DNA of 64,000 nt from the IMG/VR virus record IMGVR_UViG_3300049043_000112, positions 1 through 64,000 of that record; one strand, given 5' to 3'. Below the pieces are notes generated by a model. The model was not told where the DNA came from. It searched no databases and worked only from the letters and a program-made list of their open reading frames with translations. The translations under genes and the position numbers were made by a program. Below are positions 7,017-49,857 of the stretch, piece by piece (the stretch's first letter is position 1; each line of letters begins with the position of its first letter).

Positions 7017-8322
7017 TTACTTCTTACTTTTTCTATACTTATTTATGAAATCAATTCCGTAAGCGACTCCACCAGGTTGAAGATTTTCTTTCCCAGTACC
7101 AACTGCTCCTGGAGTTTGTTTTGCAGCGTATTTGAAATATCCAGTAGTTCCAATTAATGTATTAGGTTTTCCAGGTTGTCTATACATTTTATCCATTTTA
7201 ACTTCAGTATATTCAACCAAATCTTTAATCCAAGATTTAAACATTTGACCAGATTCTGTTACACAGATAAGATAATTGGTACCTCTACGAATAATACGTC
7301 CTATTAATCCAGTATTTAAGTTTTCTACTTTTTCACCAAGTTTAAAAATTGTTTCTGTAAGATAATTTTCACGCAGATTTTGATAATCAAACTTTGGAGC
7401 AATTTGCCATATGTCCCAACCTTCCTTAACATTCATTGAACCACGAAGAATATTGAATAATTCTTTTGCCTCTGAAGGTTTGACTTCGGGAGGAAGACCG
7501 GATCTAAATGTTTTAAAATCTCCTTCTGCGGCAGCAAGTCTCATTCTTGATGCAGACATTCCTTCTACACCTTTTGCATCAGGGTCCCTATCGCCAGATG
7601 AAACGACTTCAATGTTATCAAAGTTATAAAGTTGTCCATTATATTGGTTAGAAAGTTTTTCAAACTCCTTGACTCTATCTGCACCACCAATAATTCTTAC
7701 ACCAGCATATCCATTATTATGTGCCATTTTGAGCACGTCAAATATAGTTTTAGTATTTGCATCATTAACAATATTTCCTGCATGATTTGGATAAAACTTT
7801 TGCATATAAGCAATCTTTGTATCGGGATCTAATGGATTCTTTTTCTTGTCCTGACTTCTTGAAGGAAAGATAAGATACTGCCCATCCTTATCCTGTGATG
7901 CTGCTTGTGCTGCAGTATCCATTAATTGTTGATGCCCAATTGTCAGGGGGATTGAAACGTCCAAAAGCAACAGTAAGAGTTCCTTTTGTTTTAGGTACAG
8001 GAAGATACTGTGCTGGCGGTTGTTCCTGGGATGCTTGTTGTTCAGGTGCTGGTGCTTGTTGTTGCGCTGCTGCTTGCTGCTGAACTAATGCTGGATCAGG
8101 TATATCCAGGAGATGCAATTGTTTTTTCTTTTTCAGTCTGTGCTGGATCTTTTCACCAACTCTCTGTCGCTTATTATAAAACTTTAATTTTCCACCTTCT
8201 GTTTTTGCTACGAATTCTCCCTGCTTATCATACCATCCACCATGACCGTCTCCAACAAGTCCAAGACGCTGTGCTTGCTGAGAGGCAGATGCTTCTGTTA
8301 TGAATTGGAAAAAACTTTTCAT
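7017..8322 (-). CDS. Cytidyltransferase-like (HxGH superfamily) nucleotidyltransferase, +1 indel near 7945
   Basis: Joining 7888..8322 and 7017..7970 restores TVAFGRFNPPTIGH; also GGADRV and MSASRMR. N-terminus is MKSFFQFITE. Confidence 0.85.
7040..7047 (-). promoter_or_regulatory. Late promoter variant CATAAATA
   Basis: 33 nt upstream of the ATG at 7007. Confidence 0.6.
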
Positions 8323-16975: not shown

Positions 16976-17134
16976 TTATTCTTCCTTTCCCTTTCCACCA
17001 CCACCAGGATTAAATGGAACTGCCTTACCAGCAGGAACATTCTGAACTTTTCCTTTCATATAAACCTTATGCGCTTTTGCCATAGGGTACTTAATGGTTT
17101 TTATTTCATTAAGAAAGTGGGCGAAAGTTTTCAT
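16976..17134 (-). CDS. 52-aa basic peptide with capsid-targeting-like N-terminus
   Basis: MKTFAHFLNEIKTIKYPMAKAHKVYMKGKVQNVPAGKAVPFNPGGGGKGKEE*; TCTAAATA at 17146-17153. Not in the ORF track. Confidence 0.7.
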   Translation of the reverse strand: MKTFAHFLNEIKTIKYPMAKAHKVYMKGKVQNVPAGKAVPFNPGGGGKGKEE

Positions 17135-34701: not shown

Positions 34702-36105
34702 TCACATAAGGTTAGCAACTTTAACTCTTCTGTAGTAGACGTTAGCGTTGGTTGTAAGAGCACCAGCACCTGCGGTAAGACCCTCTGCGAATGGGTTAGC
34801 AACCATTCCATAACGGGTCTTAAATCCAATCTTAGGCTGGAAGGTATTCTCACCAACTGCACGTACCATCTGGAGAGGTACGTATGGGCAGTAGAAGAGA
34901 CCAGCATCATAAGGTGAAGAACCCTTGTATCCAACAACGTAGAACTGGTTAGCAGCAACGTTTGCCGAATATGGATCAATATAAACTCTATACTTACCTT
35001 GGAGAACACCAGCGAAGGTGTTGCCAGTGTCATCAACGTTCAAGTTAGCGTTGAGTGCAGGGGTGTAATCGAGAACACCAGCCATTGCAAGTGCCGAAGC
35101 AACGTCAGCAGAGCAAAGGATCGTGTTACCCTTCCCTCTACGAGTTTGTTGGGCGATTGCGTTTGCATCACGCTCGATCTGGAAGATCAGACCCTTGAAC
35201 TTCTCAACCGACCAACGACCGTTGGAGTCAACGTCAAGGTCAAAAGTACCAGCGGTAGCAGTGTTGACCTGAGCACCAGGCTTAGCAATCTTGTAGATTG
35301 TTCTGATGACTTCACGGTTGATTTCAGCAAGAATCTCAGTGCTGAGGATGTTAGCAAGCTCAGCTTCTGCATTCAGACCGTGAATTGCCTTCAGGTCTTG
35401 TGCGAGCTCGAGTGAGTACTCAGCTTTCAGAGCACGTGACTTAGCGGTTACAGTGACTTTCTCGATCGAGAACGCCATCTGGTTGAACTGATCAGATTCA
35501 CCTAATGATTCTGCCTCATCAGTTCTCATTCCCTGACCAACGTTATACTGGTTAGCACCAGTTGCAGCGTTGTTTGCTTGGTTTGAACCATCAAGGATTG
35601 ATGGGTTTGTACCACCTTGAGCAGTAGTACCCATACCAACAGTACCGTCGGTCCAGCCATTGGTATTGTTGAAACCACTATCTTGACCAGAGAATGCGGA
35701 ATCTACTTCGTTATAGAAGGTTTCAGATCCACTCTGAGTCTTATAGCGTGAACGCATTGCGAAGATAAGTCCAGTAGGACCATTCATTGGTTGAACGCCA
35801 CACAGATCGTAAGCGATCAGGTTAGGCATTGAACGGCGAATAAGGGAGATTAGTACAGGGTCGAAACCTTGTAGTGCTCCAGTTGATGCGCCACTTAGAC
35901 CAGTTCCAGTTCCAGTTGAAGTGCTGGTGAAGTTGGTTGGTGCTTCGTAGAGAAACTCACGCTCTTCGCGGATAGTTTTCTCTTGGTTTTCAAGCAGGAT
36001 AGCAGTTACCGCTCTACGATGTGAATCTTTGATTTCATCGAGACCTGAGTAGTCCAGAATTGGTGCCCACTTCTCCTGCAGTTGTTCAGTGTTGTACATC
36101 TGCAT
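34702..36105 (-). CDS. gp23: Major capsid protein
   Basis: EKWAPIL, FDPVLISLIRR, GVQPMNGPTGLIF, KSRALKAEYSLELAQDL, GFKTRYG. Confidence 0.98.
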   Translation of the reverse strand: MQMYNTEQLQEKWAPILDYSGLDEIKDSHRRAVTAILLENQEKTIREEREFLYEAPTNFTSTSTGTGTGLSGASTGALQGFDPVLISLIRRSMPNLIAYDLCGVQPMNGPTGLIFAMRSRYKTQSGSETFYNEVDSAFSGQDSGFNNTNGWTDGTVGMGTTAQGGTNPSILDGSNQANNAATGANQYNVGQGMRTDEAESLGESDQFNQMAFSIEKVTVTAKSRALKAEYSLELAQDLKAIHGLNAEAELANILSTEILAEINREVIRTIYKIAKPGAQVNTATAGTFDLDVDSNGRWSVEKFKGLIFQIERDANAIAQQTRRGKGNTILCSADVASALAMAGVLDYTPALNANLNVDDTGNTFAGVLQGKYRVYIDPYSANVAANQFYVVGYKGSSPYDAGLFYCPYVPLQMVRAVGENTFQPKIGFKTRYGMVANPFAEGLTAGAGALTTNANVYYRRVKVANLM

Positions 36106-36154: not shown

Positions 36155-37323
36155 TCACTTTTTGGCGACTCTTGTAAGAGTTTGAAGATATGCTTCCATA
36201 ATTGGGGAGACAGACTTAACTTCTCCTTCTTGTGAGGCATCTTCAGACAGACTTTCGGAGTCATCTTTTTGAGTACCAGTATTTGTTGGGAAATATGATT
36301 CCCTCAGAGTTACCAGTTTCTCACGATAGTTTGCTTCACTATCAAACTCAACATTTTCTGCAAGAGAAGCGAGTTTGTCCTTCTGAGAAAGTGCAAGACC
36401 CTCAGCGACATCTGCAAAGATTACATCAGCAACTGACTCTGCTAATCTTCTATTGAGAGCAACGTTTCTTTCGATTTGCTCGTTGAGTTTTTCTTCCATT
36501 TCATCAAGTTTATCTACCATACTCTCGATAACATCATATCTATCTTCAGGGATTGTTACATAATGATCTTCAAAAAGACTCTTCATTCCGGCAAGGAATG
36601 ATTCTGTCATTTCAGTCTTAAGACCGTGCTCAACTGCGAGTGCATTTTCTTGGATCCACTCGTCAGCAACATACTCAAGGTAAGCATCAACTCTGTCGGT
36701 CAGGCTTTCCTTGATTGCTTCGATTTCTTCTACAAGGGTCTGCTCATAAGCAGATTGTAGAGATTCTTTAATTTCAGCAACCTTAGATTTGATTGCTGCT
36801 TCGAAGATGGTACGGCTTTCTCTTCAAATTCTTCAGAAAGCTCTTCACCTGCAAGAAGGGCATTGACATCTTCTTCGATATCAAACTCTTCTTCCATTTT
36901 CTTTTTACCTTTCTTTTTACCACCTTCTTCTTCCTCTTCCTCTTCTTCCTCCTCTTCTTCTTCCTCTTCTTCCTTGGCTTCGGTTACTTCCTCTTCACCA
37001 TCTTCTAGTTCTTCTTCATCCTCTACTTCTACGAGTTCTTCTTCATCCTCAACTTCTTCTTTAGCAACAGATTGCATTGGTTCAGCAGCTGCTGCCTTTG
37101 CATTAACTACATTCTTTACTTGAGCAAGAGTTTTGCCTGGAGTATTGAGATGTGCTGACTCGTCATCTGGACGATAATTTTCCGGAGTTGGACCACCTAA
37201 ATCTTCCCAAGCGCCAGTTTGTCCTGGAGTAATAGATCCAGTACCGGATTGCATTGGTTCGGCAGGTGCAGCCCCTTTGGTTACTACGTTTTCCATTTCT
37301 TGTAAATTTCTACCAACGGACAT
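36155..37323 (-). CDS. gp22: Prohead core scaffold protein, -1 indel near 36815
   Basis: LSEEFEEKA(RTIFEAAIKSKV...DRVDAYLEYVADEW...EMTESFLAGMK); long acidic tract. Confidence 0.92.
36900..37060 (-). repeat. GAA/GAG low-complexity tract encoding poly-Glu in gp22
   Basis: EEEEEEEEEEEEEE followed by GGKKKGKKK. Confidence 0.8.
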
Positions 37324-37363: not shown

Positions 37364-38014
37364 TTATAGATTTGAAAGAAATTCTTGGAACAATTGTACT
37401 TTATGTTCCTGTAGAACTTTTTCATCAACTAGCGTATTTATTCTACGCTTAGTTGATTCTGCCAATCTTTCACGAAGAATTCCTCCTTCCCAGACCCATT
37501 CCTTTCCTTCCATAATTCCTGAAACAAATGCATCAGGGGCAGAAGGATCGGCAACGATATCTGCTGCTGTTGCAAGCATAAAATCTTCACCAACAATTTT
37601 GCAACCACTGTGATCCTCTTTTAAAGAACCAACACCACGAGAGGAAACTCCAAGAGTAACCCCTTCATCAATTAGGGATGAAGCAATTTTACCCATTGGG
37701 GTGGATAAAAGTTGTGCTTTACCAATAAAATTACTTCCATCTTGATAAAGTTCGCAAATTTTATGAGATACTCTATCAAGATTTACGGTTGGTCCATCAG
37801 GGTGCCCAAGTTCACCAAGAGCACGACCTTTAGCAATGAAAGATTCGGCATATCTCTTAACCTCTTTAGAAAGAGTGTCTAAAGGATACATTCTTCCATT
37901 ACGATTTTTGATGTTTCCTTGGAGAAAAACACCTTTGATATACATTTTTTTGCCGGAACCCTTACCTTCGGTAATAAATTCTACCTTTTGAATTTCTTCT
38001 GTGATGAGTTTCAT
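37364..38014 (-). CDS. gp21: Prohead protease
   Basis: MKLITE, GELGHP, LDRVSH, GVSSRG, DIVADPSAP. Confidence 0.96.
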   Translation of the reverse strand: MKLITEEIQKVEFITEGKGSGKKMYIKGVFLQGNIKNRNGRMYPLDTLSKEVKRYAESFIAKGRALGELGHPDGPTVNLDRVSHKICELYQDGSNFIGKAQLLSTPMGKIASSLIDEGVTLGVSSRGVGSLKEDHSGCKIVGEDFMLATAADIVADPSAPDAFVSGIMEGKEWVWEGGILRERLAESTKRRINTLVDEKVLQEHKVQLFQEFLSNL

Positions 38015-38016
38015 TT

Positions 38017-38559
38017 TTATTCTGAGACTAGAGTGACTACTTCTGAAATATTGAAAAATGTATTAGAATCGTCAGTTAAGCAAGCAACTTTTACACTCCT
38101 ATAAGCTGATGCTCCAGTTATATTTGGAGATGTTAAGGACGAACTATTATATCCAATTGTAATTGAATTGTCAGTCATCGATACGATTGGATTGTGTGCA
38201 GTATTAATACCTGCTGTTGCTGCGCCAGCGATGGTAATATAATCAGTAGATTCGAATGGATTGGCTACAGAATCTGCAAACCTTATAGTTGTAGTTGTGC
38301 CAGTTGTAACTCCAACAATTACCTGTCTTCTCATAGTTTCTTTCAAAATATCTGTCCCATAAGGAACAATATGAAAACTATTTCTGTTTACGACAGGATC
38401 TGTTCCAATAGCAACATATCCACCATAGCTAGATGAAGTTGCACCGATTGTAATTCTTAAATAACCACTTTTTAGTGCAATCGGAACACTTGTTACCGCA
38501 ACTCCTGCTGAAGGAGATAATCTTGGTATAACTGTGTCTTGAATAATCTTTGTTGCCAT
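38017..38559 (-). CDS. Conserved hypothetical in the head module
   Basis: Intact beta-rich 180-aa ORF between the portal-adjacent small gene and gp21. Confidence 0.7.
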   Translation of the reverse strand: MATKIIQDTVIPRLSPSAGVAVTSVPIALKSGYLRITIGATSSSYGGYVAIGTDPVVNRNSFHIVPYGTDILKETMRRQVIVGVTTGTTTTIRFADSVANPFESTDYITIAGAATAGINTAHNPIVSMTDNSITIGYNSSSLTSPNITGASAYRSVKVACLTDDSNTFFNISEVVTLVSE

Positions 38560-38729
38560 TATTCGTCATCTCCTTCTGTTTGTTCTGCATTACCAAACAT
38601 CACGGATGCAATCTCTGGACGAGCAGCATCTACTTTTTCAGCAGCTTTAGCATATAGTAATTCTTTAATTCTGCTGGAAACATCAGAAGCTGATCCATCA
38701 GTTGCAATCAAATCGATAAGTTCTTCCAT
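38559..38729 (-). CDS. Small prohead core protein (gp67/gp68 position)
   Basis: MEELIDLIATDGSASDVSSRIKELLYAKAAEKVDAARPEIASVMFG; TATAAATA at 38742-38749. Not in the ORF track. Confidence 0.7.
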   Translation of the reverse strand: MEELIDLIATDGSASDVSSRIKELLYAKAAEKVDAARPEIASVMFGNAEQTEGDDE

Positions 38730-38756: not shown

Positions 38757-40453
38757 TTATATCTTACCACCTTTGGGTTCCTGTGGAATTTCTGTAGGTG
38801 CGGGTGCTGCTGGTTCTGCTGGAACTTCACCTAATGCTGGTTGTTCTCCTACTGCTCCTTCTGGTGGAACTCCTTCTGGTGGAATTGGATTTCCCATTTC
38901 ATCAACGGGAGCATTAGGATCTGGAAGAATACCTTTTTCAATTTCATCATCAATCTGTTGATCAATTTCAATAATTTCAGAATCTGTTTGGCGAAGAATT
39001 TTTTTACGAACATACTCTGTAGAATAATATTTTCCAATATAAGGTTCAACTTGTGTCATCAATGAAATACGGTTTGTTAAAATTTCTGCTTCCTTTAGTT
39101 CTGCAAAATGATTATCATATAAGAAGTCATATTGAATATGATCCTCCATCCTTTCCCAATCTTCTGGAGAAACAATATTCTTCAAAAGAAGTTGAGTACG
39201 GAGCATATCATTAAACATATTCGAAAAACGCTTTCTAAGTCTCCCTACAAACTTAGAAAACTTAAGTTCATCTCTTAAAATTTCAGATGAACGTCCAAGA
39301 TTAAACCCATCTCCTCCACCAGCAATTCTTGTTTCTGGAACTCCAAGTGCTCTATAAAGTTTCTTTTGAAAATATTCAATATCTGCAAGTTCACCAAGGT
39401 TTTGACCACCAGGTAAGGTTGTAATCTCGGTTCCTCTACCACCTCTCTTCTTGGAAGCCAAAAATCTTCCAGCATCGCCATATATTTGCGATCATCACGA
39501 ATTTCTCCAGTATTTGCATCATAAACAAGTTTATTACGATAACGACTCATCACTTCTTTAAGATATTGCTCTGCTTTTACTTTAGGAAGATTGCCAACAT
39601 CGATATAGAAAATTCTTCTTTCTGGAGCACGTGATAATCTGTAGATAACCAGAGAATCTTCAATCATTCTTAACTGGTTAAGTGCTTTAATCGCTTTATG
39701 AAGATATGAAAGTACAGTTCCTTTATTTCTATCTACAAGTCCAGAAGTGCAATAAGTAATTGAATCTTTTGCAATTTTAAGTGATCCTTTTGCTGCTCCA
39801 CTCAAAGAACCCATGGGATAATTTGGTGCTGGAGAATAAATGAAATATTCTTCAACATCAGAATAACTCATTTCTGAGTTAGTAAGATTTGCATTTGCGG
39901 TTAAAGTACTTACGATTGGTTGTCCATTTTTGCCGTTCGTCTTTACCTCTTGACGAACATGCTTCATTTTCATTGGATCAATGTATCTGATTTCTTTTAT
40001 ACCTTCTTGTGGTTTTTTAGTATCAATAACTTTCAAGTAATATAATCTACCATCAACATACCAATTCCTAAAAATTTCATGACACTTTCTATCAAAGTCC
40101 ATCATCTCTTTGATGGACTTAAATTCATCACGAATTGCTTTTTTGAGTTTATCGCTAGCATTTAAATTTGATAATTCAATTTCAACTGGAGAATCATAAA
40201 GATCACTTACAAGGGCTTCGTTTACAACATCTTCAATCGCAGCATCACACTCCGGATGTAATGCCATTTCACGATAACGACGCATTAAATCAAACTCAGT
40301 TCTATAGACACCTTCAATATCTACATACTGACCGTAGAATCCAGATTGAATATAATAATCAACCCCGTCCTCATCTGTCTGAGGAACGGGGGATACTATA
40401 GATTTGGATTTTTCCTCTGTATCTTCAATCGAAAAACCAAAAAGTTTCGCCAT
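38757..40453 (-). CDS. gp20: Portal vertex protein, -1 indel near 39447
   Basis: MAKLFGFSI, YRLSRAPERRIFYIDVGNLP, LEDFWLPRR(EGGRGTEITTLPGG). Confidence 0.96.
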
Positions 40454-43559: not shown

Positions 43560-45258
43560 TTAACGATAATCCCACATATAAGAACGATCACCATATTCAT
43601 CTAAATTCCAAACATCAGTTGTTTGCACTCCATTTTCTTTTGTTGCAAACATCCATCTATCTCCAGTTTCTTTTTCTATAATATCATCCATATCTTCAAA
43701 TCCATCAGAAATAAATCCAAATGGGGACATATCTTGTTCTATCTGATTTTTTTGTTCTTCATAAATTCTTTTACGAACATCATTGTCCGTCATCTCTTTG
43801 AAATAATCCTGAGCAACTAACCAAGAGAAAATTACAAGACACATTGCTAAGTCATCATTACAACCTTCTTCTGCTTCAAATGAATTATGACGTTGTGCAA
43901 ATGTAGTAAGTTCTGATATAATATCATAATCAACTGTTAATAACTTATCATCTTCTAGTAATGTTTTTAAATTAGAGCATCCTAATTTCTTAACAGATGC
44001 AGTCATTCTTACGCCCAATTGAGATTTCTTTCCACTAAATCCAGAACCAACCAATTGACCAGCTCGTCCTCTTATTGCACACATTAAAACATTATCATAC
44101 TCTAAATCAAAGTGCATAATATTTGCTACTTGATTCTCCAATATCATTAACTTCTATTAATAACCAAGCATCATTGTAACCTCTTGCTACTTCGTTAATA
44201 ATACTTGGAAATAGCATGGGTTTAATTTCGTTATTGCGATATTTTGCTACAACTTTATACGGAAAGTTTGTAATATCAAAAACAATAAATGCAGAGTAGT
44301 CATTTCCAAGTCCACGAGCAACATCAACTGTCATCAAGTAGTTGTGTTCTTCAATTGGATTTTCATAAATGTCTAAACCAGCGTTTCTCTTAATTGGGTC
44401 TTCATAAACAAGATTTCTAAGTTTTGCTGGATTAATCAGCGTATTAACAGAACCTAAGAATTCACATTCAAATTCTACCTTGAATTGTTGTTCTGAAGTG
44501 TTTGCAATTGTCTGTTCTTTCCAGACAGCATCTCTACCAGGCACTTCAGACCAATGAACATCAGTCGGTACATATTCATTTTTACCGCGTTCGGAATCAT
44601 GCCACATGCGGTAAAAATGGTTCATACCACGTGGTGTTGAAACTATGATGACTTTTGTGCTTTGTCCAGAAGAAATAGTAGGATAAACAGAGGCAAAGAA
44701 GTCATCAGCAATGTGATTCGGGATGAAAGCGAACTCGTCAAGAAAGATGACATTATAGGATCCGCCTCGGACAGCAGACGAAGAAGTAGAGTTAGATGAA
44801 ATCTTGGAGCCATTTTCTAATTCCAACGATCCTTTGTTCCAGGATATAATACCCTGTTGCATCCACTTTGGTAAATTCTATAAGCAAGTTGTAGTCTCCC
44901 AAGTAGGTCTCTAGCAGTAGATGCTTTGTTTGCTAGAATAGCTATATTTACATTATCATTAAATACCGCATAATGTAACAAATATGAAACGCAAGTTGTA
45001 GATTTACCCGTTTGGCGGGGCATCTTACAAATATTAAATCTGTTCTTATGGAAATTATGAATTAGTTTCTCTTGAAACGGATACATCTCTAAAAGGAACA
45101 AGACCGTGATCCAGAGAAACAATTTTAATGTAGTTTCTCGCAAAATAAACAGGATCTTCTTTACACTTTAAGAACTCGATAATTTGTTCTTCAGTGAATT
45201 GGATTTGCGTATTTGCTTTTTTTAAATTTGGATTACCAAGATATACATTATCACTCAT
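43560..45258 (-). CDS. gp17: Terminase large subunit, three indels (~45090, ~44880, ~44135)
   Basis: MPRQTGKSTT, IFLDEFAF, STPRG, VDVARG, DDLAM, spread over four track pieces. Confidence 0.96.
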
Positions 45259-45263
45259 AAAAA

Positions 45264-46577
45264 TTACCTACTAATTTCTTCCCAGTCTAGTGAAGCAAAA
45301 ACATCAGCACCAGCAGTATCGGATGCAACTACTAGTGTTAATTCATAAGCAGTTCCAGTCAGTCCATTTCTTTCTAATTGAAACTTAAATAATGCTTCTT
45401 TTAGAATATCAACAGATGAGGAAGATTGGTTTGCTGATGAGAAAAATCCAGATGCTAGAATTCTTCCACCACTTACAGTTCCTCCATCAATTTTATATTC
45501 CACAGCACTATCAGCGCCCGCACTTACCCAAGTACCACCACTAGTAGTTGCAGATGCTCTTACCTGCCAGTTATATTGTGGACCATTTCCAGTACCCATC
45601 AAGGAAAGTGCTGTCAAAATAACAATTGCATCTAATCTATTTGGAGAAGATTTTAGACGAATAGAAATAACGGGATAATAAGTCCCTGCAGGAGTTGGTA
45701 AATCTACTGGTGCTGTGATTGGAGTATTTACTGCTTGTTGCAATCCACGCAATTCATAACCACCTTCCGAAATTACAGAAGAACACACCTGTTTCATAGT
45801 ACTACTACCTGTAGTAATACCAGTATTTGCAATCTCATATCTTAAAGGAAGAGATGCTGTTGTAATATAAGTTGATTGGATATAGTTTGCGTGATGGAAT
45901 GAATGTGCGTGAATAAACTTCCCATCAATCACAAATCCCATTCTTACTGTACCAAGACCCAACCACTTAATATCCATCCAAAGAATTTGTGCTTTGGTGA
46001 TATCTAATGTAATACCAGAAACCCCAGTACCATCTAACTTATCAATATTCCAATCATTTTGTGCAACTGAGGTTTGAGTACCAGTAGATAAACTTCTTTC
46101 TACAAAGTAAGGTGTTGTATTATTGATTTCAAAATACATTCCATTATCAGCACCAAAATATCCTACTCTTTGACGAAGGTTTTGTTTTGGTGTAGCGGGA
46201 ACAAAGGTATTTAAAACAAGTAAAGATTTGCCTGGTTGATATGAGAATGTCTTTGTGGTCTCTCTAATTACAGAGCAACCAGCAGTAGTTCCAATACCAA
46301 TATTAATTAATCCTTCAGTAGTTGCAAATCCAACTGTAGAACCAGTTCCTACAACTAAACTTTCCCAGAGATTATTGTCTCTATATCTGTGAGAACTATC
46401 AAATAATGTAAGTGGATTTGATACTCTTGTTCTTCCAAAAGCATCTGGATTTACACTTACAGGAAATCTATTGATATTATCTACAACATTTCCATCCCTT
46501 GTCGCTATCAAAGGAACTTCAAAGAGTGTACGCTCTTGATTCAAATAATCTTGAGTATTCTTATTCCACTGTGCCAT
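45264..46577 (-). CDS. Hypothetical protein, probably structural (beta-rich)
   Basis: DAFGRTRVSNPLTLFDS, YQPGKSL, QRVGYF, WLGLGTVRMGF. Confidence 0.65.
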   Translation of the reverse strand: MAQWNKNTQDYLNQERTLFEVPLIATRDGNVVDNINRFPVSVNPDAFGRTRVSNPLTLFDSSHRYRDNNLWESLVVGTGSTVGFATTEGLINIGIGTTAGCSVIRETTKTFSYQPGKSLLVLNTFVPATPKQNLRQRVGYFGADNGMYFEINNTTPYFVERSLSTGTQTSVAQNDWNIDKLDGTGVSGITLDITKAQILWMDIKWLGLGTVRMGFVIDGKFIHAHSFHHANYIQSTYITTASLPLRYEIANTGITTGSSTMKQVCSSVISEGGYELRGLQQAVNTPITAPVDLPTPAGTYYPVISIRLKSSPNRLDAIVILTALSLMGTGNGPQYNWQVRASATTSGGTWVSAGADSAVEYKIDGGTVSGGRILASGFFSSANQSSSSVDILKEALFKFQLERNGLTGTAYELTLVVASDTAGADVFASLDWEEISR

Positions 46578-46580
46578 GAA

Positions 46581-46892
46581 TTATTCACCCCAGGATAATC
46601 TTTCTGGTCTGTATCTTTCTGTATTTTTAATCTTTAATGGATTGGTTGAATTTGGATAAACGTTATGGACAATGGCACCTGGATACTCTGCTTGAAGTTG
46701 TTCTGCAAGTGCGTTCTTATCCATCATTTTTCCTTCAACTTCCATACGATAAAGTCTTCCTTGCCAAACTATATCAGCAAGAAAAGATTCAGTTGCAGTT
46801 TCTTGTTGGGATGAAGAATTCATATAAAGATTTCCGTTGAAATCTCCAGAAATGTTGATACTTTCTGAAATAAATTGTTGAAAGGATTTCAT
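46581..46892 (-). CDS. Hypothetical protein with capsid-targeting-like N-terminus
   Basis: MKSFQQFISE then a globular domain (ADIVWQG...YPGAIVHNVYP). Confidence 0.7.
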   Translation of the reverse strand: MKSFQQFISESINISGDFNGNLYMNSSSQQETATESFLADIVWQGRLYRMEVEGKMMDKNALAEQLQAEYPGAIVHNVYPNSTNPLKIKNTERYRPERLSWGE

Positions 46893-46893
46893 T

Positions 46894-48619
46894 TTAGTTG
46901 CAGTTCCAACGACGAAGGGCTTTGTTAATTCTTGAATCTGGATCTCTTGCAGTTTTAGCAGAAGTTAGTTTGGATTTCATTCCGGACATACGTCGGCAGA
47001 AGTTTGCACGACGCTTTGCTCTTTTACCAGTTGGTTTCTTTTCGGTTACAGCAGTTTGTAACTTAGAACCTGGATTCTCACGTCGATAAGCGTCTACTGC
47101 TTTTTGACTAAGACCATCAGTTTTATCCTGACGATTTACTTTTTGCCAATCTTCCATAAATTGACTAAAAGTTTTATTTTCTTGAACTCTACCCATAATT
47201 TGATCAATCTGCTGCTGTTGTTTTTCATTTCTTTGTTTAATTTTTTCAGCAGTTACTTTTGCTTTATCATATACCATTTTACCTGCCAGTGCAGTTCCTG
47301 CTGCCAGTCCAGCACGAATACCCAATCCAATCAGAGGATTTTCATTTAATTCATTAGACTCTTTCATTTCTCCACTATCTACATAATCTGCTGCAGTATC
47401 AATATAATCTGCTGCTTTAGTAATTTTTGATTGAACCCAAGCCTCAATATTTCCTTCTCCCTTCATTTTTTTACGAAGTCTTTTTGCTGCAGAAATAATT
47501 GTAGAAAGTTCAGAGCGAGCCATTGAATACTCATGATCATAAGACTTCAGGAAAATTTCCAGGATGAACAGTTGCGATATTATATTTTAATTGGTTTGTT
47601 GTTAATGCAGATGGTCTAGAAAACATATCCCAATACTTAGATCCATACTTACATTCATCACGAGTTTCATCTTTTTTACATTTAGGGCAATATCTAATCA
47701 TTCCTTGCTCCTCTTTTACTGGTATGCAATTTGGAACCAATTTTTTACCTTTCTTTTTCATTCCTTCTTCCTTATACCCATCCCAACAATCTTCTGATTT
47801 TGTTCCCCAATTTGCAGCACCAACTTTACGACATTTGACCAATGCTCCTGAAGCATATGCACTTGGCCAGACATCATATCTTGACTTAACTTTTTGGTAA
47901 CAGGCATCTTTTTTACCACTACCTTTACCTGGTTTATCTTTAACTTCTTGTAAATCCATTTCTTCAGTTCTTACGTTAGTTGGTTTTGCTCCACCAGTTT
48001 TTTCTGGTTGATTAGGATCTAGACGATTTTTTCTTCTTCTTGCCTTTTCCTCTTCTTCTGGAGATAAATTTGCTGCCATTTTAGAACTACCGCATTTTGG
48101 TGTAGAAGTTTGACCTGGTTGGCGAGCACATGGTTTTCCTGCATATTTGCCTCCAAGTTGAACCCAACCTTTTTTTCCATCAGAAGACTTTGATTTGCCA
48201 AACCAGTCATGAAGACCTTCATCACCAGAAGTTGTTTCTTCTTTTACATCTTTGAACTTTTTATGATGCTTTTTAGCATCAGATTCCATTTTTTTCAAAC
48301 GAGTATAATAATCTGGAATTTCATCAAGATGTTGAAGAGCAATATCAGTTGCTAAGTCTTTATCCTTTGTATGCTCATGTTCAATTGGAATACCCATTTC
48401 AAGTTGCTTCTTTACAAAAGAAACTTCAAGACGATGTTTTTTTGCAATCTGTTCAACCGATTTATGAGATTTCAATTCGTGCATTTCATTGAAAGGAGAT
48501 TTTGATTGAGTTGATTCACCTTTTGCTCTTTTTTTACGAGCAGCACAGTGTGCTTTTTGAGAAAATCCCTAAGGACTATCACAGTTTATTGATCTTTTGT
48601 ATTTGTCAGACCAACTCAT
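46894..48619 (-). CDS. Modular basic/Cys-rich late protein (~574 aa), in-frame TAG at 48569-48571 and +1 indel near 47547
   Basis: MSWSDKYKRSINCDSP*GFSQKAHC is in frame with 47537..48484; FPE-SYDHEYSMARSEL joins 46894..47523; TCTAAATA at 48643-48650. Confidence 0.7.
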
Positions 48620-48631
48620 TAAAGTATATGT

Positions 48632-49054
48632 TTACTCTTTATTATTTAGAAAACCTTGCTTCAGTAGTTTAGAAAGTTCTGATGTAGAACCAACAAAAAC
48701 AGCATTGTTAGTTACATTATTTGTAGTTTTAACAGTATCTTCTTCTACATCTTTTAATTTTTTTTGTAAATCTATAAGTTTATCTGTCACGTCACCGACA
48801 CTTTTAATAAGTTGCCCAGCAACTTCATAAGCTCTTGGACTTCCACCTTCTCCAGCAAGTTCCATAATTCCATTGATTGCTTCCTGACCCTTTTCAATCA
48901 AAGAATATAAATTTGCACGTGTATATTCATAATCTTTTTTAATGTCATCAGTTTTTAAGGGAGTAATGTTTAAATCACTCCTGTCTTTTTCTACTTCTAC
49001 GATGCTACTCTCTATATTCAAAGATGCATCCAAACCATCATAATTATTTTTCAT
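48632..49054 (-). CDS. gp16: Terminase small subunit
   Basis: DYEYTRANLYSLIEKGQEA, SPRAYEVAGQL, NAVFVGST. Confidence 0.92.
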   Translation of the reverse strand: MKNNYDGLDASLNIESSIVEVEKDRSDLNITPLKTDDIKKDYEYTRANLYSLIEKGQEAINGIMELAGEGGSPRAYEVAGQLIKSVGDVTDKLIDLQKKLKDVEEDTVKTTNNVTNNAVFVGSTSELSKLLKQGFLNNKE

Positions 49055-49060
49055 ATCTTA

Positions 49061-49857
49061 TTAAATATCAGTTTGTCTTGTAGGACTAAATTCCTTACCG
49101 TCAAAGAACATTTCAATTGACTCATCAAATCCAAAATCATCAGTTGGTTGTGCATCAATTGGATCGGGAGTTACAGTATATCTCATCTCTCTCTTTGCAG
49201 TCTGAGTATCTGTACCAGTATAATAATCAACTTGAACCTTACGAATAAGACCATCCGTACTTTCAGCAATAGGACCAAATAGATATGTTTTAGCAGTAAA
49301 ATTGAAAGTATAAATCAATATTCTTCTAGATGAAAAATCTCCTTCATAATCATCTGTAAAAGAAACATTATCAAGAACAACTGGAATATCTCTTTTTCTC
49401 CAATCGAATCTACTAAATCAACTGTTAACGTAAAAGCAGGTTGAAAATATGGCAGAATTTGTTCAACAACTTGTAAAGCATCATCTTGAATTTTACTCAT
49501 CAAATTAAGTTGAAATCCAAGATTATAAGGAACAGGAAGGTATACTTTTTTAAGATTATTACCATCTTGTACTTTAAAAGTTTGCGTTATATTTGCTTTT
49601 CTTGTAGGATCGTATTGTATTGATGTCATCTCAAAAGACAATCGAGGAAGAGTCATTGCAATTGGTTTATTTAATTCCGACTGTTGTTCAATCCTAGCAA
49701 GAAATTTTTGCATTGGACCATAAGCTAATGGAACTTTTATCTGACTAATACTGCCTCCAGAAGAATCTTTATGGCGAATATTAATATCATTAAATAAAGT
49801 ACCAAAGGAGATAACAGTTCTTCTAATAATTTCGTGGTAATAGTAAGTACCTAGCAT
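49061..49857 (-). CDS. gp15: Tail sheath stabiliser / tail terminator, -1 indel near 49395
   Basis: YYHEIIRR, VPLAYGP.QKF, LPRLSFE, QIVEQILPYFQP-like segment, YTFNFTAKTYLFGP. Confidence 0.92.

What the first reader, a model, noticed from the sequence alone, without database searches (positions are those of the whole stretch)
46894..48650. Candidate 574-aa polyprotein of small basic and Cys-rich modules separated by gp21-like sites
Seen after repair: modules such as SINCDSP.GFSQKAHC, HEHT..KDLATDIALQHLDEIPDYY, GLHDWFGKSKS..GWV..GKPCAR..TPKC, KKDACYQKVKSRYDVWPSAYASGALVKCRK, DCWDGYK..G.K......VPNC, CPKC..C, EAWVQSKITKAADY and RRANFCRRMSG..SRINKALRRWNC. They are linked by x-x-E joints (PFNE, VKEE, RTEE, DLQE, TKSE, FPE, ELNE, RVQE), and the last is preceded by an internal CTS-like KTFSQFME. 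It lies between gp16 and gp17, followed by a CTS-bearing gene. Inference: a concatenated cargo matured by the prohead protease into many DNA-binding or anti-defence peptides.
Basis: partly seen in the sequence, partly recalled or inferred. Interest (0 to 1): 0.65.

Follow-up and report, generated by a model that had tools for sequence, protein, structure and literature searches.

The report
Modular virion protein, probable protease-cut polyprotein
This is one broken copy of a known but uncharacterised cyanophage virion gene, built from small shuffled basic modules that each follow a likely head-protease cutting site, so it may be a precursor cut into several small capsid-packaged proteins.

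Summary
There is no 574-aa ORF in the window as it stands. The minus strand holds 16 codons and an in-frame TAG (48569-48571), a 315-aa ORF, and a 209-aa ORF in another frame. 58 distinct relatives in viral contigs, and S-SRM01, S-T4, S-RIM8, Syn9 and S-SM1, carry a single ORF of 430-690 aa here, next to terS. terL, portal and scaffold are also split, so assembly indels are likely.

The family is PHROG 727 / T4-GC119 (Pfam DUF5661 and DUF6321). It was detected in S-SM1 virions in 2010. It is a mosaic: 38 module orders among 66 proteins, and AlphaFold gives beads on a string (pTM 0.23).

The modules also exist as stand-alone small genes. Stand-alone DUF6321 genes carry a 10-residue leader, consensus MKTFKQFIxE, against the T4 capsid targeting sequence MKTYQEFIAE. 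Stand-alone WPSAYASG genes have acidic leaders ending in hydrophobic-x-Glu. In the mosaics this motif precedes four module types in 78-92% of contexts, against 2-22% expected. The phage encodes gp21.

Cleavage into packaged basic peptides is therefore well motivated but unproven. The function is unknown.

The parts
46894..48619 (-). Whole gene as inferred (T4-GC119 / PHROG 727 mosaic virion protein). It is broken in this assembly by a TAG and a 1-nt shift.
48518..48619 (-). Module M1, the N-terminal 2-Cys module (C..P.GFSQKAHC plus a basic tail). It contains the in-frame TAG.
   Evidence: AF2 pLDDT 74-82 in L003.
48569..48571 (-). In-frame TAG. Relatives have CAG/CAA (Gln), Lys, His or Ser at this position.
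   Evidence: (table 3). No suppressor tRNA, and TAG is used as a normal stop.
48245..48463 (-). Module M2, helical, Pfam DUF5661. The preceding PFNE-M is a hydrophobic-x-Glu site followed by the ATG of the 315-aa ORF.
   Evidence: E 4.8e-15, 56 bits against a cut-off of 27
47972..48220 (-). Module M3 (GLHDWF..GWV..PC..PKC) with its basic tail.
   Evidence: pLDDT 73-81.
47945..47953 (-). LQE: the best-conserved candidate protease site, directly before VKDKPGKGSG of M4.
   Evidence: The stand-alone gene P0122 starts MKEEMDLQE-VKDKPGKG.
47792..47944 (-). Module M4 (DACY..WPSAYASGALVKCRK), very basic.
   Evidence: One search found 3090 small stand-alone relatives
47726..47791 (-). Module M5 (CWDGY..PNC), the most mobile module. 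In S-SRM01 it sits before DUF6321 instead.
47546..47701 (-). Module M6 (RYCPKC..C, beta hairpins). Holds invariant residues.
47545..47547 (-). Site of the 1-nt insertion that shifts the frame (NFPE|SYD).
   Evidence: alignment to L003; table 4 (relatives lack one base at 47547)
47365..47544 (-). Module M7 (DHEYSMARSEL..AWVQSKITKAADY), a helical hairpin and the most conserved part. The ATG of the 209-aa ORF is the invariant Met inside it.
   Evidence: invariant columns 361-412 of L003
47179..47340 (-). Variable region M8: a Gly/Ala-rich hydrophobic stretch plus a helix, ending in VQE.
47152..47178 (-). Internal CTS-like NKTFSQFME, directly before DUF6321.
   Evidence: T4 CTS sequence from PMC8442874.
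46897..47151 (-). Module M9, Pfam DUF6321, a basic helical domain with a conserved Cys pair.
   Evidence: E 8.1e-15, 55.7 bits against a cut-off of 28.5
46581..46892 (-). Next gene, 103 aa (PHROG 1742), with the N-terminal CTS-like MKSFQQFISE. It is conserved at this position in S-SRM01, S-T4, S-RIM8 and S-SKS1.
45264..46577 (-). 437-aa virion structural protein (PHROG 1645), a conserved neighbour.
   Evidence: E 1e-173
48632..49054 (-). Terminase small subunit (gp16), directly upstream.
37364..38014 (-). gp21-type prohead protease (Peptidase_S77), the proposed processing enzyme.
   Evidence: 120 bits against a cut-off of 27

Best explanation
The region is one gene, not three. It is the window phage's copy of the cyanomyovirus T4-GC119 / PHROG 727 protein, which sits directly after the small terminase gene. 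The copy is interrupted here by a nonsense codon and by a 1-nt insertion that is probably an assembly error.

The product is a string of about nine small, mostly basic modules joined by disordered acidic linkers. Most modules carry a conserved Cys pair. Each module type is an independent evolutionary unit that also exists as a stand-alone small gene.

In T4-like marine phages those stand-alone genes carry short N-terminal leaders that end in hydrophobic-x-Glu. For DUF6321 the leader is a near copy of the 10-residue T4 capsid targeting sequence.

I infer that the stand-alone forms are T4-style internal head proteins: targeted to the scaffolding core, then trimmed by the gp21 protease. I infer that the mosaic gene is a fusion of such units that keeps their leaders as linkers. 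On this reading the protein enters the prohead and is cut after Glu at several linkers into small basic peptides that stay with the DNA.

Shown: gene unity, modularity, module shuffling, motif enrichment, presence of gp21, and virion detection of an orthologue.

Inferred: capsid-interior location, cleavage, and what the peptides do (DNA charge neutralisation, or action in the host after injection).
For: Gene unity:
- Single ORFs in S-SRM01, in 58 distinct viral-contig relatives, and in S-T4, S-RIM8, Syn9, S-SM1 and S-P4.
- PHROG 727 spans both window ORFs.
- The frame-2 text SYDHEYS upstream of the second ATG matches relatives.
- Only one 1-nt indel against L003.

Assembly errors:
- terL, portal and scaffold are also split.
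- The contigs of run X1 differ from the window mainly by 1-nt gaps, one of them inside terL at 44134.

Modularity:
- 38 architectures among 66 proteins.
- AF2 gives pTM 0.23, with confident islands separated by stretches below pLDDT 50.

Stand-alone forms:
- 3560 small DUF6321 proteins and 3090 small M4 proteins were found.
- 107 of 107 scorable DUF6321 proteins (of the 120 listed) have Glu directly before DWQ.
- 40 of them have an exact 10-residue leader, in 23 distinct versions. The consensus is MKTFKQFIxE, against T4 MKTYQEFIAE.
- Leader positions 4, 7, 8 and 10 are the ones that matter in T4 (PMC9026906).
- 103 of 119 M4 proteins have hydrophobic-x-Glu before the basic part. The leader's mean net charge is -3.4 and the rest is +13.
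- Leaderless M4 proteins start exactly at the residue after the Glu.

Mosaics:
- The motif lies just upstream of M3, M4, M5 and M9 in 87, 92, 91 and 78% of distinct contexts, against 19, 22, 8 and 2% expected. The background rate is 1.7% per residue.
- Proteins that lack the upstream modules start at these boundaries, for example MNE-EGLRDWF and M-GTLHHWF.

Protease and virion association:
- gp21 (Peptidase_S77) is encoded in the window.
- T4-GC119 was detected in S-SM1 virions with 13 peptide counts.

Leader goes with phage type:
- The three podovirus DUF6321 proteins examined have no such leader.
Against: - No cleavage product has been observed for any member. The S-SM1 data as read here give peptide counts only, with no termini or sizes. 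Syn9 carries the gene, but it was not detected in virions.
- The full-length proteins start MSWS.., not with a CTS. In T4 the CTS was shown to work at the N-terminus.
- The window's internal KTFSQFME is one residue shorter than the leader, with Phe at P3. Aligned to T4 it puts Asp at position 10, which blocks processing in T4.
- Junctions before the invariant M6 and M7 carry the motif in only 26-33% of contexts. The window's own M4-M5 junction (TKSE) lacks a hydrophobic P3.
- Contexts are related by descent, so the binomial p-values overstate the case.
- DUF6321 and M4 also occur in phages that are not T4-like.
- The specificity of the cyanophage gp21 has not been measured.
Confidence: 0.55

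Rival explanations
1. An uncleaved, flexible multi-domain virion protein. The modules stay linked and act together, for example as a DNA-associated or neck/portal-associated accessory protein. The hydrophobic-x-Glu motifs would then be inherited leader remnants or helix-capping features with no proteolytic role.
For: - The family was found in virions by ordinary tryptic proteomics.
- There is no N-terminal CTS on the full-length protein.
- The motif is weak at the M6 and M7 junctions.
- The M6-M7 pair is invariant, as would suit a structural anchor.
Against: - The motif uses Glu far more often than Asp and keeps a hydrophobic P3, at variable spacing from the module core and whichever module lies upstream.
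- Stand-alone genes and truncated proteins start exactly at the predicted P1' residue.
- A fixed multi-domain machine would not be expected to tolerate 38 module orders.
Confidence: 0.25
2. In this particular phage the gene really is broken. The TAG and the frameshift would both be genuine, leaving a 315-aa product that restarts at Met46 and a 209-aa product that starts inside M7, or leaving a pseudogene.
For: - The TAG is also present in the contigs of run X1 (table 3).
- Natural relatives lacking M1 start at the same place, for example MRLKSHK in L018, so loss of M1 is tolerated.
- No read data cover 47413-47548 in X1 (table 8).
Against: - Essential genes (terL, portal, scaffold) are split in the same record, which a viable phage could not bear.
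- X1 contradicts the window's extra base in terL at 44134.
- The text between the TAG and Met46, and the seven codons before the second ATG, are still conserved at protein level.
- A product starting at the second ATG would lack the invariant D, E and S of M7.
- X1 may be the source sample, so its agreement on the TAG is not independent support.
Confidence: 0.12
3. A non-structural early or host-directed protein, such as a nucleoid-binding or regulatory protein, that merely co-purified with S-SM1 particles. It would be neither packaged in the head nor processed.
For: - It was not detected in Syn9 virions although the gene is present.
- Sullivan et al. describe it as part of a possible mobile cassette with metabolic genes.
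- The very basic modules could stick to DNA or to particles.
Against: - It has a conserved position between terS and a proven virion protein, within the head/packaging block.
- In podoviruses DUF6321 lies directly after the major capsid gene.
- The leaders match the T4 capsid targeting sequence.
- It gave 13 peptide counts in S-SM1, comparable to gp13 (13), gp48 (13) and gp21 (8).
Confidence: 0.08

Closest known systems
T4 internal proteins IPI, IPII, IPIII (and Alt) with their capsid targeting sequence
   Same: - Small, highly basic proteins.
- A 10-residue N-terminal leader of the same pattern (T4 MKTYQEFIAE; here MKTFKQFIxE on stand-alone DUF6321 proteins and MKSFQQFISE on the next gene).
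- The leader ends in hydrophobic-x-Glu, the form of site cut by gp21.
- The phage has a gp21 homologue, and the genes are non-core and hypervariable.
   Different: - No sequence similarity in the mature parts.
- Here many units are fused into one 430-690-aa protein with the leaders kept internally.
- The fused protein has no N-terminal CTS.
- The modules carry conserved Cys pairs.
- Packaging and cleavage have not been shown.
T4 prohead core proteins gp22, gp67, gp68, and the multiply processed head proteins of phiKZ and SPN3US
   Same: One precursor is cut after Glu at several sites by the prohead protease (PMC5694885). In phiKZ-like phages several fragments stay in the head.
   Different: In T4 the core-protein fragments are mostly expelled. 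Here the pieces would be folded, conserved, basic mini-domains that also exist as separate genes. The phiKZ-type motif is S/A-x-E, not hydrophobic-x-E.
T4-GC119 (Sullivan et al. 2010) = PHROG 727; Pfam DUF5661 and DUF6321
   Same: This is the same family. The HMM matches are above threshold, the position next to gp16 is the same, and so is the extreme length variation (276-2985 nt in 15 of 16 cyanomyoviruses).
   Different: The family was only labelled hypothetical or structural. In the literature searched, no modular, CTS or processing interpretation was found.
Viral polyproteins (for example of picornaviruses)
   Same: Several functional units are encoded in one frame and separated by short protease sites.
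   Different: The proposed protease is a capsid-maturation enzyme acting inside the prohead. The units are 20-90 residues long, and their order is not fixed.

Membership tests
PHROG 727 / T4-GC119 cyanomyovirus virion protein | Profile match over the protein | tested here: met
   the 315-aa piece gives E 9.3e-77 and the 209-aa piece E 1.8e-34, on different parts of the same 450-position profile.
PHROG 727 / T4-GC119 cyanomyovirus virion protein | Position directly downstream of the small terminase gene in the head/packaging block | tested here: met
   SSM1_115 is labelled T4-LIKE GC: 119.
PHROG 727 / T4-GC119 cyanomyovirus virion protein | Presence in purified virions | not testable with these tools
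   Known only for the S-SM1 orthologue (13 peptide counts, PMC3037559 Suppl. Table 8). Not detected in Syn9.
Pfam DUF5661 | Score above the gathering threshold | tested here: met
   56.1 bits against 27, residues 11-68 of the 315-aa ORF.
Pfam DUF6321 | Score above the gathering threshold | tested here: met
   55.7 bits against 28.5, residues 132-206 of the 209-aa ORF.
T4-type internal head protein (CTS-targeted, gp21-processed) | N-terminal capsid targeting sequence of about 10 residues | tested here: not met
   The full-length protein starts MSWSDKYK. CTS-like text occurs only internally (47152-47178). It is N-terminal in stand-alone DUF6321 relatives and in the next gene.
T4-type internal head protein (CTS-targeted, gp21-processed) | Hydrophobic-x-Glu processing site(s), and a gp21 protease in the genome | tested here: met
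   sites; Peptidase_S77, 120 bits.
T4-type internal head protein (CTS-targeted, gp21-processed) | Actual cleavage by the prohead protease and retention inside the capsid | not testable with these tools
   Needs peptide termini from virions, or an in vitro digestion.
T4-type internal head protein (CTS-targeted, gp21-processed) | Sequence or fold similarity to IPI, IPII, IPIII or Alt | tested here: not met
   No Pfam or NCBIfam hit other than the two DUFs. No significant PDB fold match.
Stop-codon recoding (TAG read as an amino acid) | A suppressor tRNA, and avoidance of TAG as a terminator | tested here: not met
   Of 23 tRNAs, none has a CTA anticodon. TAG ends 20 of 156 long ORFs.

The most novel reading that the evidence does not exclude
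T4-like cyanophages package a combinatorial cargo. They use the same capsid-targeting leader and gp21 cutting rule as coliphage T4. Many of their small basic internal proteins are fused into one ever-shuffling polyprotein, which the prohead protease cuts inside the head into six or more Cys-stapled peptides. These travel with the DNA into the host. The locus next to terS would then be a cassette for rapid exchange of injected effectors.
Probability: 0.35. Interest if true: 0.75.

Novelty: new variant of a known kind. Interest (0 to 1): 0.6.

Why it matters
Cyanomyoviruses are among the most abundant viruses in the sea, and no counterpart of the T4 internal proteins had come up for them in the literature searched here.

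If the reading is right, three things follow:
- The T4 capsid-targeting and processing code would be conserved from coliphages to cyanophages.
- A widespread, hypervariable gene of unknown function (two Pfam DUFs, several PHROGs, thousands of small metagenomic ORFs) would get a concrete role.
- It would be the first case of a head-protease-processed polyprotein whose pieces are also free-standing genes.

The idea can be tested directly with existing isolates and with existing proteomic raw data. It would also supply natural leader tags for loading foreign proteins into cyanophage capsids.

Tried and rejected
- **TAG recoding:** rejected. There is no suppressor tRNA, and TAG is a normal terminator. 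TAG was read only as X.
- **Three independent genes:** rejected, on the evidence of intact homologues.
- **One compact fold:** rejected. pTM is 0.23.
- **Fold-based function:**
  - Foldseek against the PDB with the full model gave nothing at E <= 0.001.
  - VIA-align wide search with a DUF6321 model (pLDDT 62) gave only Z < 4 helical noise.
- **NCBIfam:** no hits.
- **Literature:** nothing found for DUF6321/DUF5661, for Syn9 gp114, or for CTS in cyanophages. The P-SCSP1u cryo-EM paper gave no hit for the terms searched (gp14, gp15, hypothetical protein, mass spectrometry).
- **gp21 in the contigs carrying stand-alone genes:** could not be searched, because those records are not held.
- **Read check of the frameshift:** the only near-identical run (X1) has no contig across 47413-47548. 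It may also be the source sample.
Full report
**What is in the sequence**

The window is the first 64 kb of a 236-kb IMG/VR record of a T4-like cyanophage. Its closest isolate is the freshwater Synechococcus phage S-SRM01, at about 77% nt identity over this region.

On the minus strand, 13 nt after the stop of the small terminase gene (48632-49054), an ATG at 48619 opens a frame. That frame reads 16 codons and hits a TAG at 48569-48571. It then continues without another stop, through an ATG at 48484, to a stop at 47537-47539. This is the 315-aa ORF.

A second ORF of 209 aa (47523-46894) lies in a different frame.

**Is the repair justified?**

Yes.
- S-SRM01 has a single 609-aa CDS at the same place.
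- In 58 distinct relatives recovered from viral contigs, the homologue is one open frame of 430-690 aa.
- PHROG 727 matches the 315-aa piece and the 209-aa piece on successive parts of one profile.
- In the second frame, the seven codons upstream of the 209-aa ORF's ATG read SYDHEYS, exactly as in the intact relatives. That ATG is an invariant internal Met.
- A nucleotide alignment with the closest relative (L003, 90% aa identity) shows only one 1-nt indel, right after NFPE, and one 3-nt indel.
- Contigs of related phages in two metagenomes lack one base at 47547.

The TAG corresponds to CAG or CAA in near relatives, and to Lys, His or Ser in others.

The record has 23 tRNAs, none a suppressor. 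TAG terminates 20 of 156 long ORFs. There is therefore no sign of recoding.

The large terminase (four pieces), the portal (two) and the scaffold (two) are also split in this record. The contigs of the one near-identical run differ from the window mostly by single-base gaps. One of these removes the extra base in terL at 44134.

I conclude that the frameshift is most likely an assembly error. The TAG is shared with that run, which may be the source sample. It may be real. If so, restart at Met46 would give a product like natural relatives that lack the first module.

**What the gene is**

It belongs to a known but uncharacterised family:
- Pfam DUF5661 near the N-terminus and DUF6321 at the C-terminus, both above threshold.
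- PHROG 727.
- T4-GC119 in the clustering of Sullivan et al. 2010. The S-SM1 gene SSM1_115 and the S-P4 annotation carry that label.

That paper's Supplementary Table 8 lists T4-GC119 as detected in purified S-SM1 virions with 13 peptide counts. It was present but not detected in Syn9, and absent from S-PM2. Gene sizes range from 276 to 2985 nt in 15 of 16 cyanomyoviruses.

Synteny is conserved: terS, this gene, a roughly 103-aa gene, a roughly 437-aa proven virion protein (PHROG 1645), then terL.

**Modularity**

I distinguish nine modules in the window copy (coordinates under parts):
- M1: N-terminal 2-Cys module.
- M2: DUF5661.
- M3: GLHDWF..PKC.
- M4: DACY..WPSAYASG..C.
- M5: CW.GY..PNC.
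- M6: RYCPKC..C.
- M7: DHEYSMARSEL..AWVQSKITKAADY.
- M8: a variable stretch.
- M9: DUF6321.

With simple anchors, 66 proteins fall into 38 different module strings. Examples of rearrangement:
- M5 sits either after M4 or after M7.
- M7 precedes M4 in S-T4 and S-RIM8.
- M6 comes first in S-SM1.
- S-SKS1 splits the set over two genes.

Only M6 and M7 hold the invariant columns.

AlphaFold2 on the intact L003 protein, with the 58-sequence alignment, gives mean pLDDT 55.7 and pTM 0.23. Confident islands (M1, M2, M3, M5-M6, part of M9) are separated by stretches below 50. M4 and M7 also fall below 50, although both are highly conserved. The protein does not fold as one unit and its architecture is not invariant.

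**Stand-alone modules and their leaders**

Searching with the DUF6321 part alone finds 3560 proteins of 54-171 aa. Among the 120 best, 107 have a Met start and the DWQ anchor.
- All 107 have Glu directly before DWQ.
- 40 have a leader of exactly ten residues, in 23 distinct versions.
- The per-position consensus is M-K-T-F-K-Q-F-I-x-E.

The T4 capsid targeting sequence is MKTYQEFIAE (PMC8442874). In T4, residues 4 and 7 carry targeting and residues 8 and 10 carry processing (PMC9026906). Those four positions are the conserved aromatic or aliphatic residues and the Glu here.

One such stand-alone gene lies directly before a PHROG 1645 virion protein, in a cyanomyovirus-like contig.

The three podovirus DUF6321 proteins I read (HTVC104P, P-SCSP1o, Skadi-3) start with basic residues and have no leader. 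Two of them lie directly after the major capsid gene.

Searching with M4 alone finds 3090 proteins of about 56-97 aa.
- 103 of 119 with a Met start have hydrophobic-x-Glu upstream of DACY.
- Leaders are acidic (mean net charge -3.4) and the remainder is very basic (+13).
- Leaderless versions start exactly at the residue that follows the Glu in the others, for example M-AKDKKGKGSG.
- One stand-alone gene starts MKEEMDLQE-VKDKPGKG, which is the same text as the M3-M4 linker of the window protein.

**The linkers of the mosaics**

Over the 66 proteins the motif [LIVMF]-x-E occurs at 1.7% of positions. The share of distinct upstream contexts with the motif just upstream of the module core is given below.

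| Module | Contexts with motif | Expected |
|---|---|---|
| M3 | 87% | 19% |
| M4 | 92% | 22% |
| M5 | 91% | 8% |
| M9 | 78% | 2% |
| M6 | 26% | 8% |
| M7 | 33% | 8% |

The same motif with Asp is much rarer at these places. The spacing to the module core varies. The motif is present whichever module lies upstream.

When upstream modules are missing, the protein starts at the boundary, for example MNE-EGLRDWF in S-T4 and M-GTLHHWF in one contig. The contexts are related by descent, so the p-values are inflated, but the effect sizes are large.

The window copy has twelve such sites. The other two (LDE, VTE) lie inside the two Pfam domains.

The window encodes a gp21-type protease (Peptidase_S77, 120 bits, 37364-38014). 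T4 gp21 and its giant-phage relatives all cut after Glu. They cut core proteins at several sites (PMC5694885). The L/I-x-E consensus for T4 is from my own knowledge of Black et al. 1994; PMC9026906 speaks of a cleavage logo and gives LIE-9 as a conforming site.

**Most likely mechanism**

The stand-alone modules look like T4-style internal head proteins: a leader that targets the scaffolding core, removal of the leader by gp21, and a small basic mature protein that stays with the DNA.

The mosaic gene looks like a fusion of such units, with the leaders kept as linkers. The simplest reading is that it is carried into the prohead and cut at several linkers.

What brings the full-length protein into the prohead is open. 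It has no N-terminal CTS. Candidates are the internal CTS-like stretch before DUF6321 and the invariant M6-M7 pair, which has few cutting motifs around it.

What the peptides do is unknown. Their charge suggests DNA binding. By analogy with T4 IPI, a role against host defence is possible. Neither was tested, and no fold match gave a lead.

I put 0.55 on the processing model as a whole. I put about 0.9 on the parts that are shown: one gene, a modular and shuffled build, and membership of a virion-associated family.

**Weak points**
- No cleavage product has been seen.
- The internal KTFSQFME is one residue shorter than the leader and has Phe at P3.
- The window's M4-M5 junction lacks a hydrophobic P3.
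- Syn9 virions did not show the protein.
- The modules also occur in phages that are not T4-like.
- The cyanophage protease's specificity is inferred from T4.

**Novelty**

The gene family and its presence in virions are known. I did not find any of the following in the literature searched:
- T4-like targeting leaders on cyanophage small proteins.
- The module-by-module correspondence between the mosaics and stand-alone genes.
- The cutting-site pattern at module boundaries.

I rate this a new variant of a known kind: T4 internal proteins and multiply processed head proteins.

Noticed in passing
window 43560-45258 (terL), 38757-40453 (portal), 36155-37323 (scaffold gp22), 49061-49857 (gp15): Essential head, packaging and neck genes are each split into two to four overlapping ORFs in different frames. 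The contigs of run X1 lack the window's extra base at 44134. The record seems to carry many single-base indel errors, so any ORF-level reading of this window needs care.
   Followed up: partly
window 7888-8322 (-), 16976-17134 (-), 46581-46892 (-): Three small ORFs start with T4-CTS-like decapeptides (MKSFFQFITE, MKTFAHFLNE, MKSFQQFISE). They are candidate internal head proteins. The third (PHROG 1742) is conserved next to this locus in S-SRM01, S-T4, S-RIM8 and S-SKS1.
   Followed up: partly
L088 (HTVC104P gp76), L089 (P-SCSP1o 14), L090 (Skadi3_45): DUF6321 also occurs as an 84-94-aa basic protein in pelagiphage and Prochlorococcus podoviruses. In two of them it lies directly after the major capsid gene. 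None has a CTS-like leader.
   Followed up: partly
L001 4375-4785 and 7918-8445 (S-SRM01): S-SRM01 has an endonuclease VII gene between the mosaic gene and the 103-aa gene, and a homing endonuclease nearby. Both are absent from the window. Sullivan et al. also describe an endonuclease in the T4-GC119 cassette, which may help the locus to shuffle.
   Followed up: no
window 38559-38729 (-) and 38017-38559 (-): Between portal and gp21 lie a 56-aa acidic ORF (PHROG 14164) and a 180-aa ORF with no PHROG match. They occupy the positions that gp67 and gp68 hold in T4.
   Followed up: no
L095 6001-6240 and neighbours: A stand-alone M4 protein with a long amphipathic leader (..IIEEEL..VLDE followed by a poly-Lys run) lies in an 88-kb phage contig. 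That contig encodes a ClpP-type protease, a trypsin-like protease and an Hc1 histone-like protein. The module is therefore used by other phage types, perhaps with another protease.
   Followed up: no
window 34702-36105 (-), gp23: The major capsid protein has ..REFLYE|APTNF about 55 residues from its N-terminus. This is a plausible propeptide cutting site of the same hydrophobic-x-Glu form.
   Followed up: no
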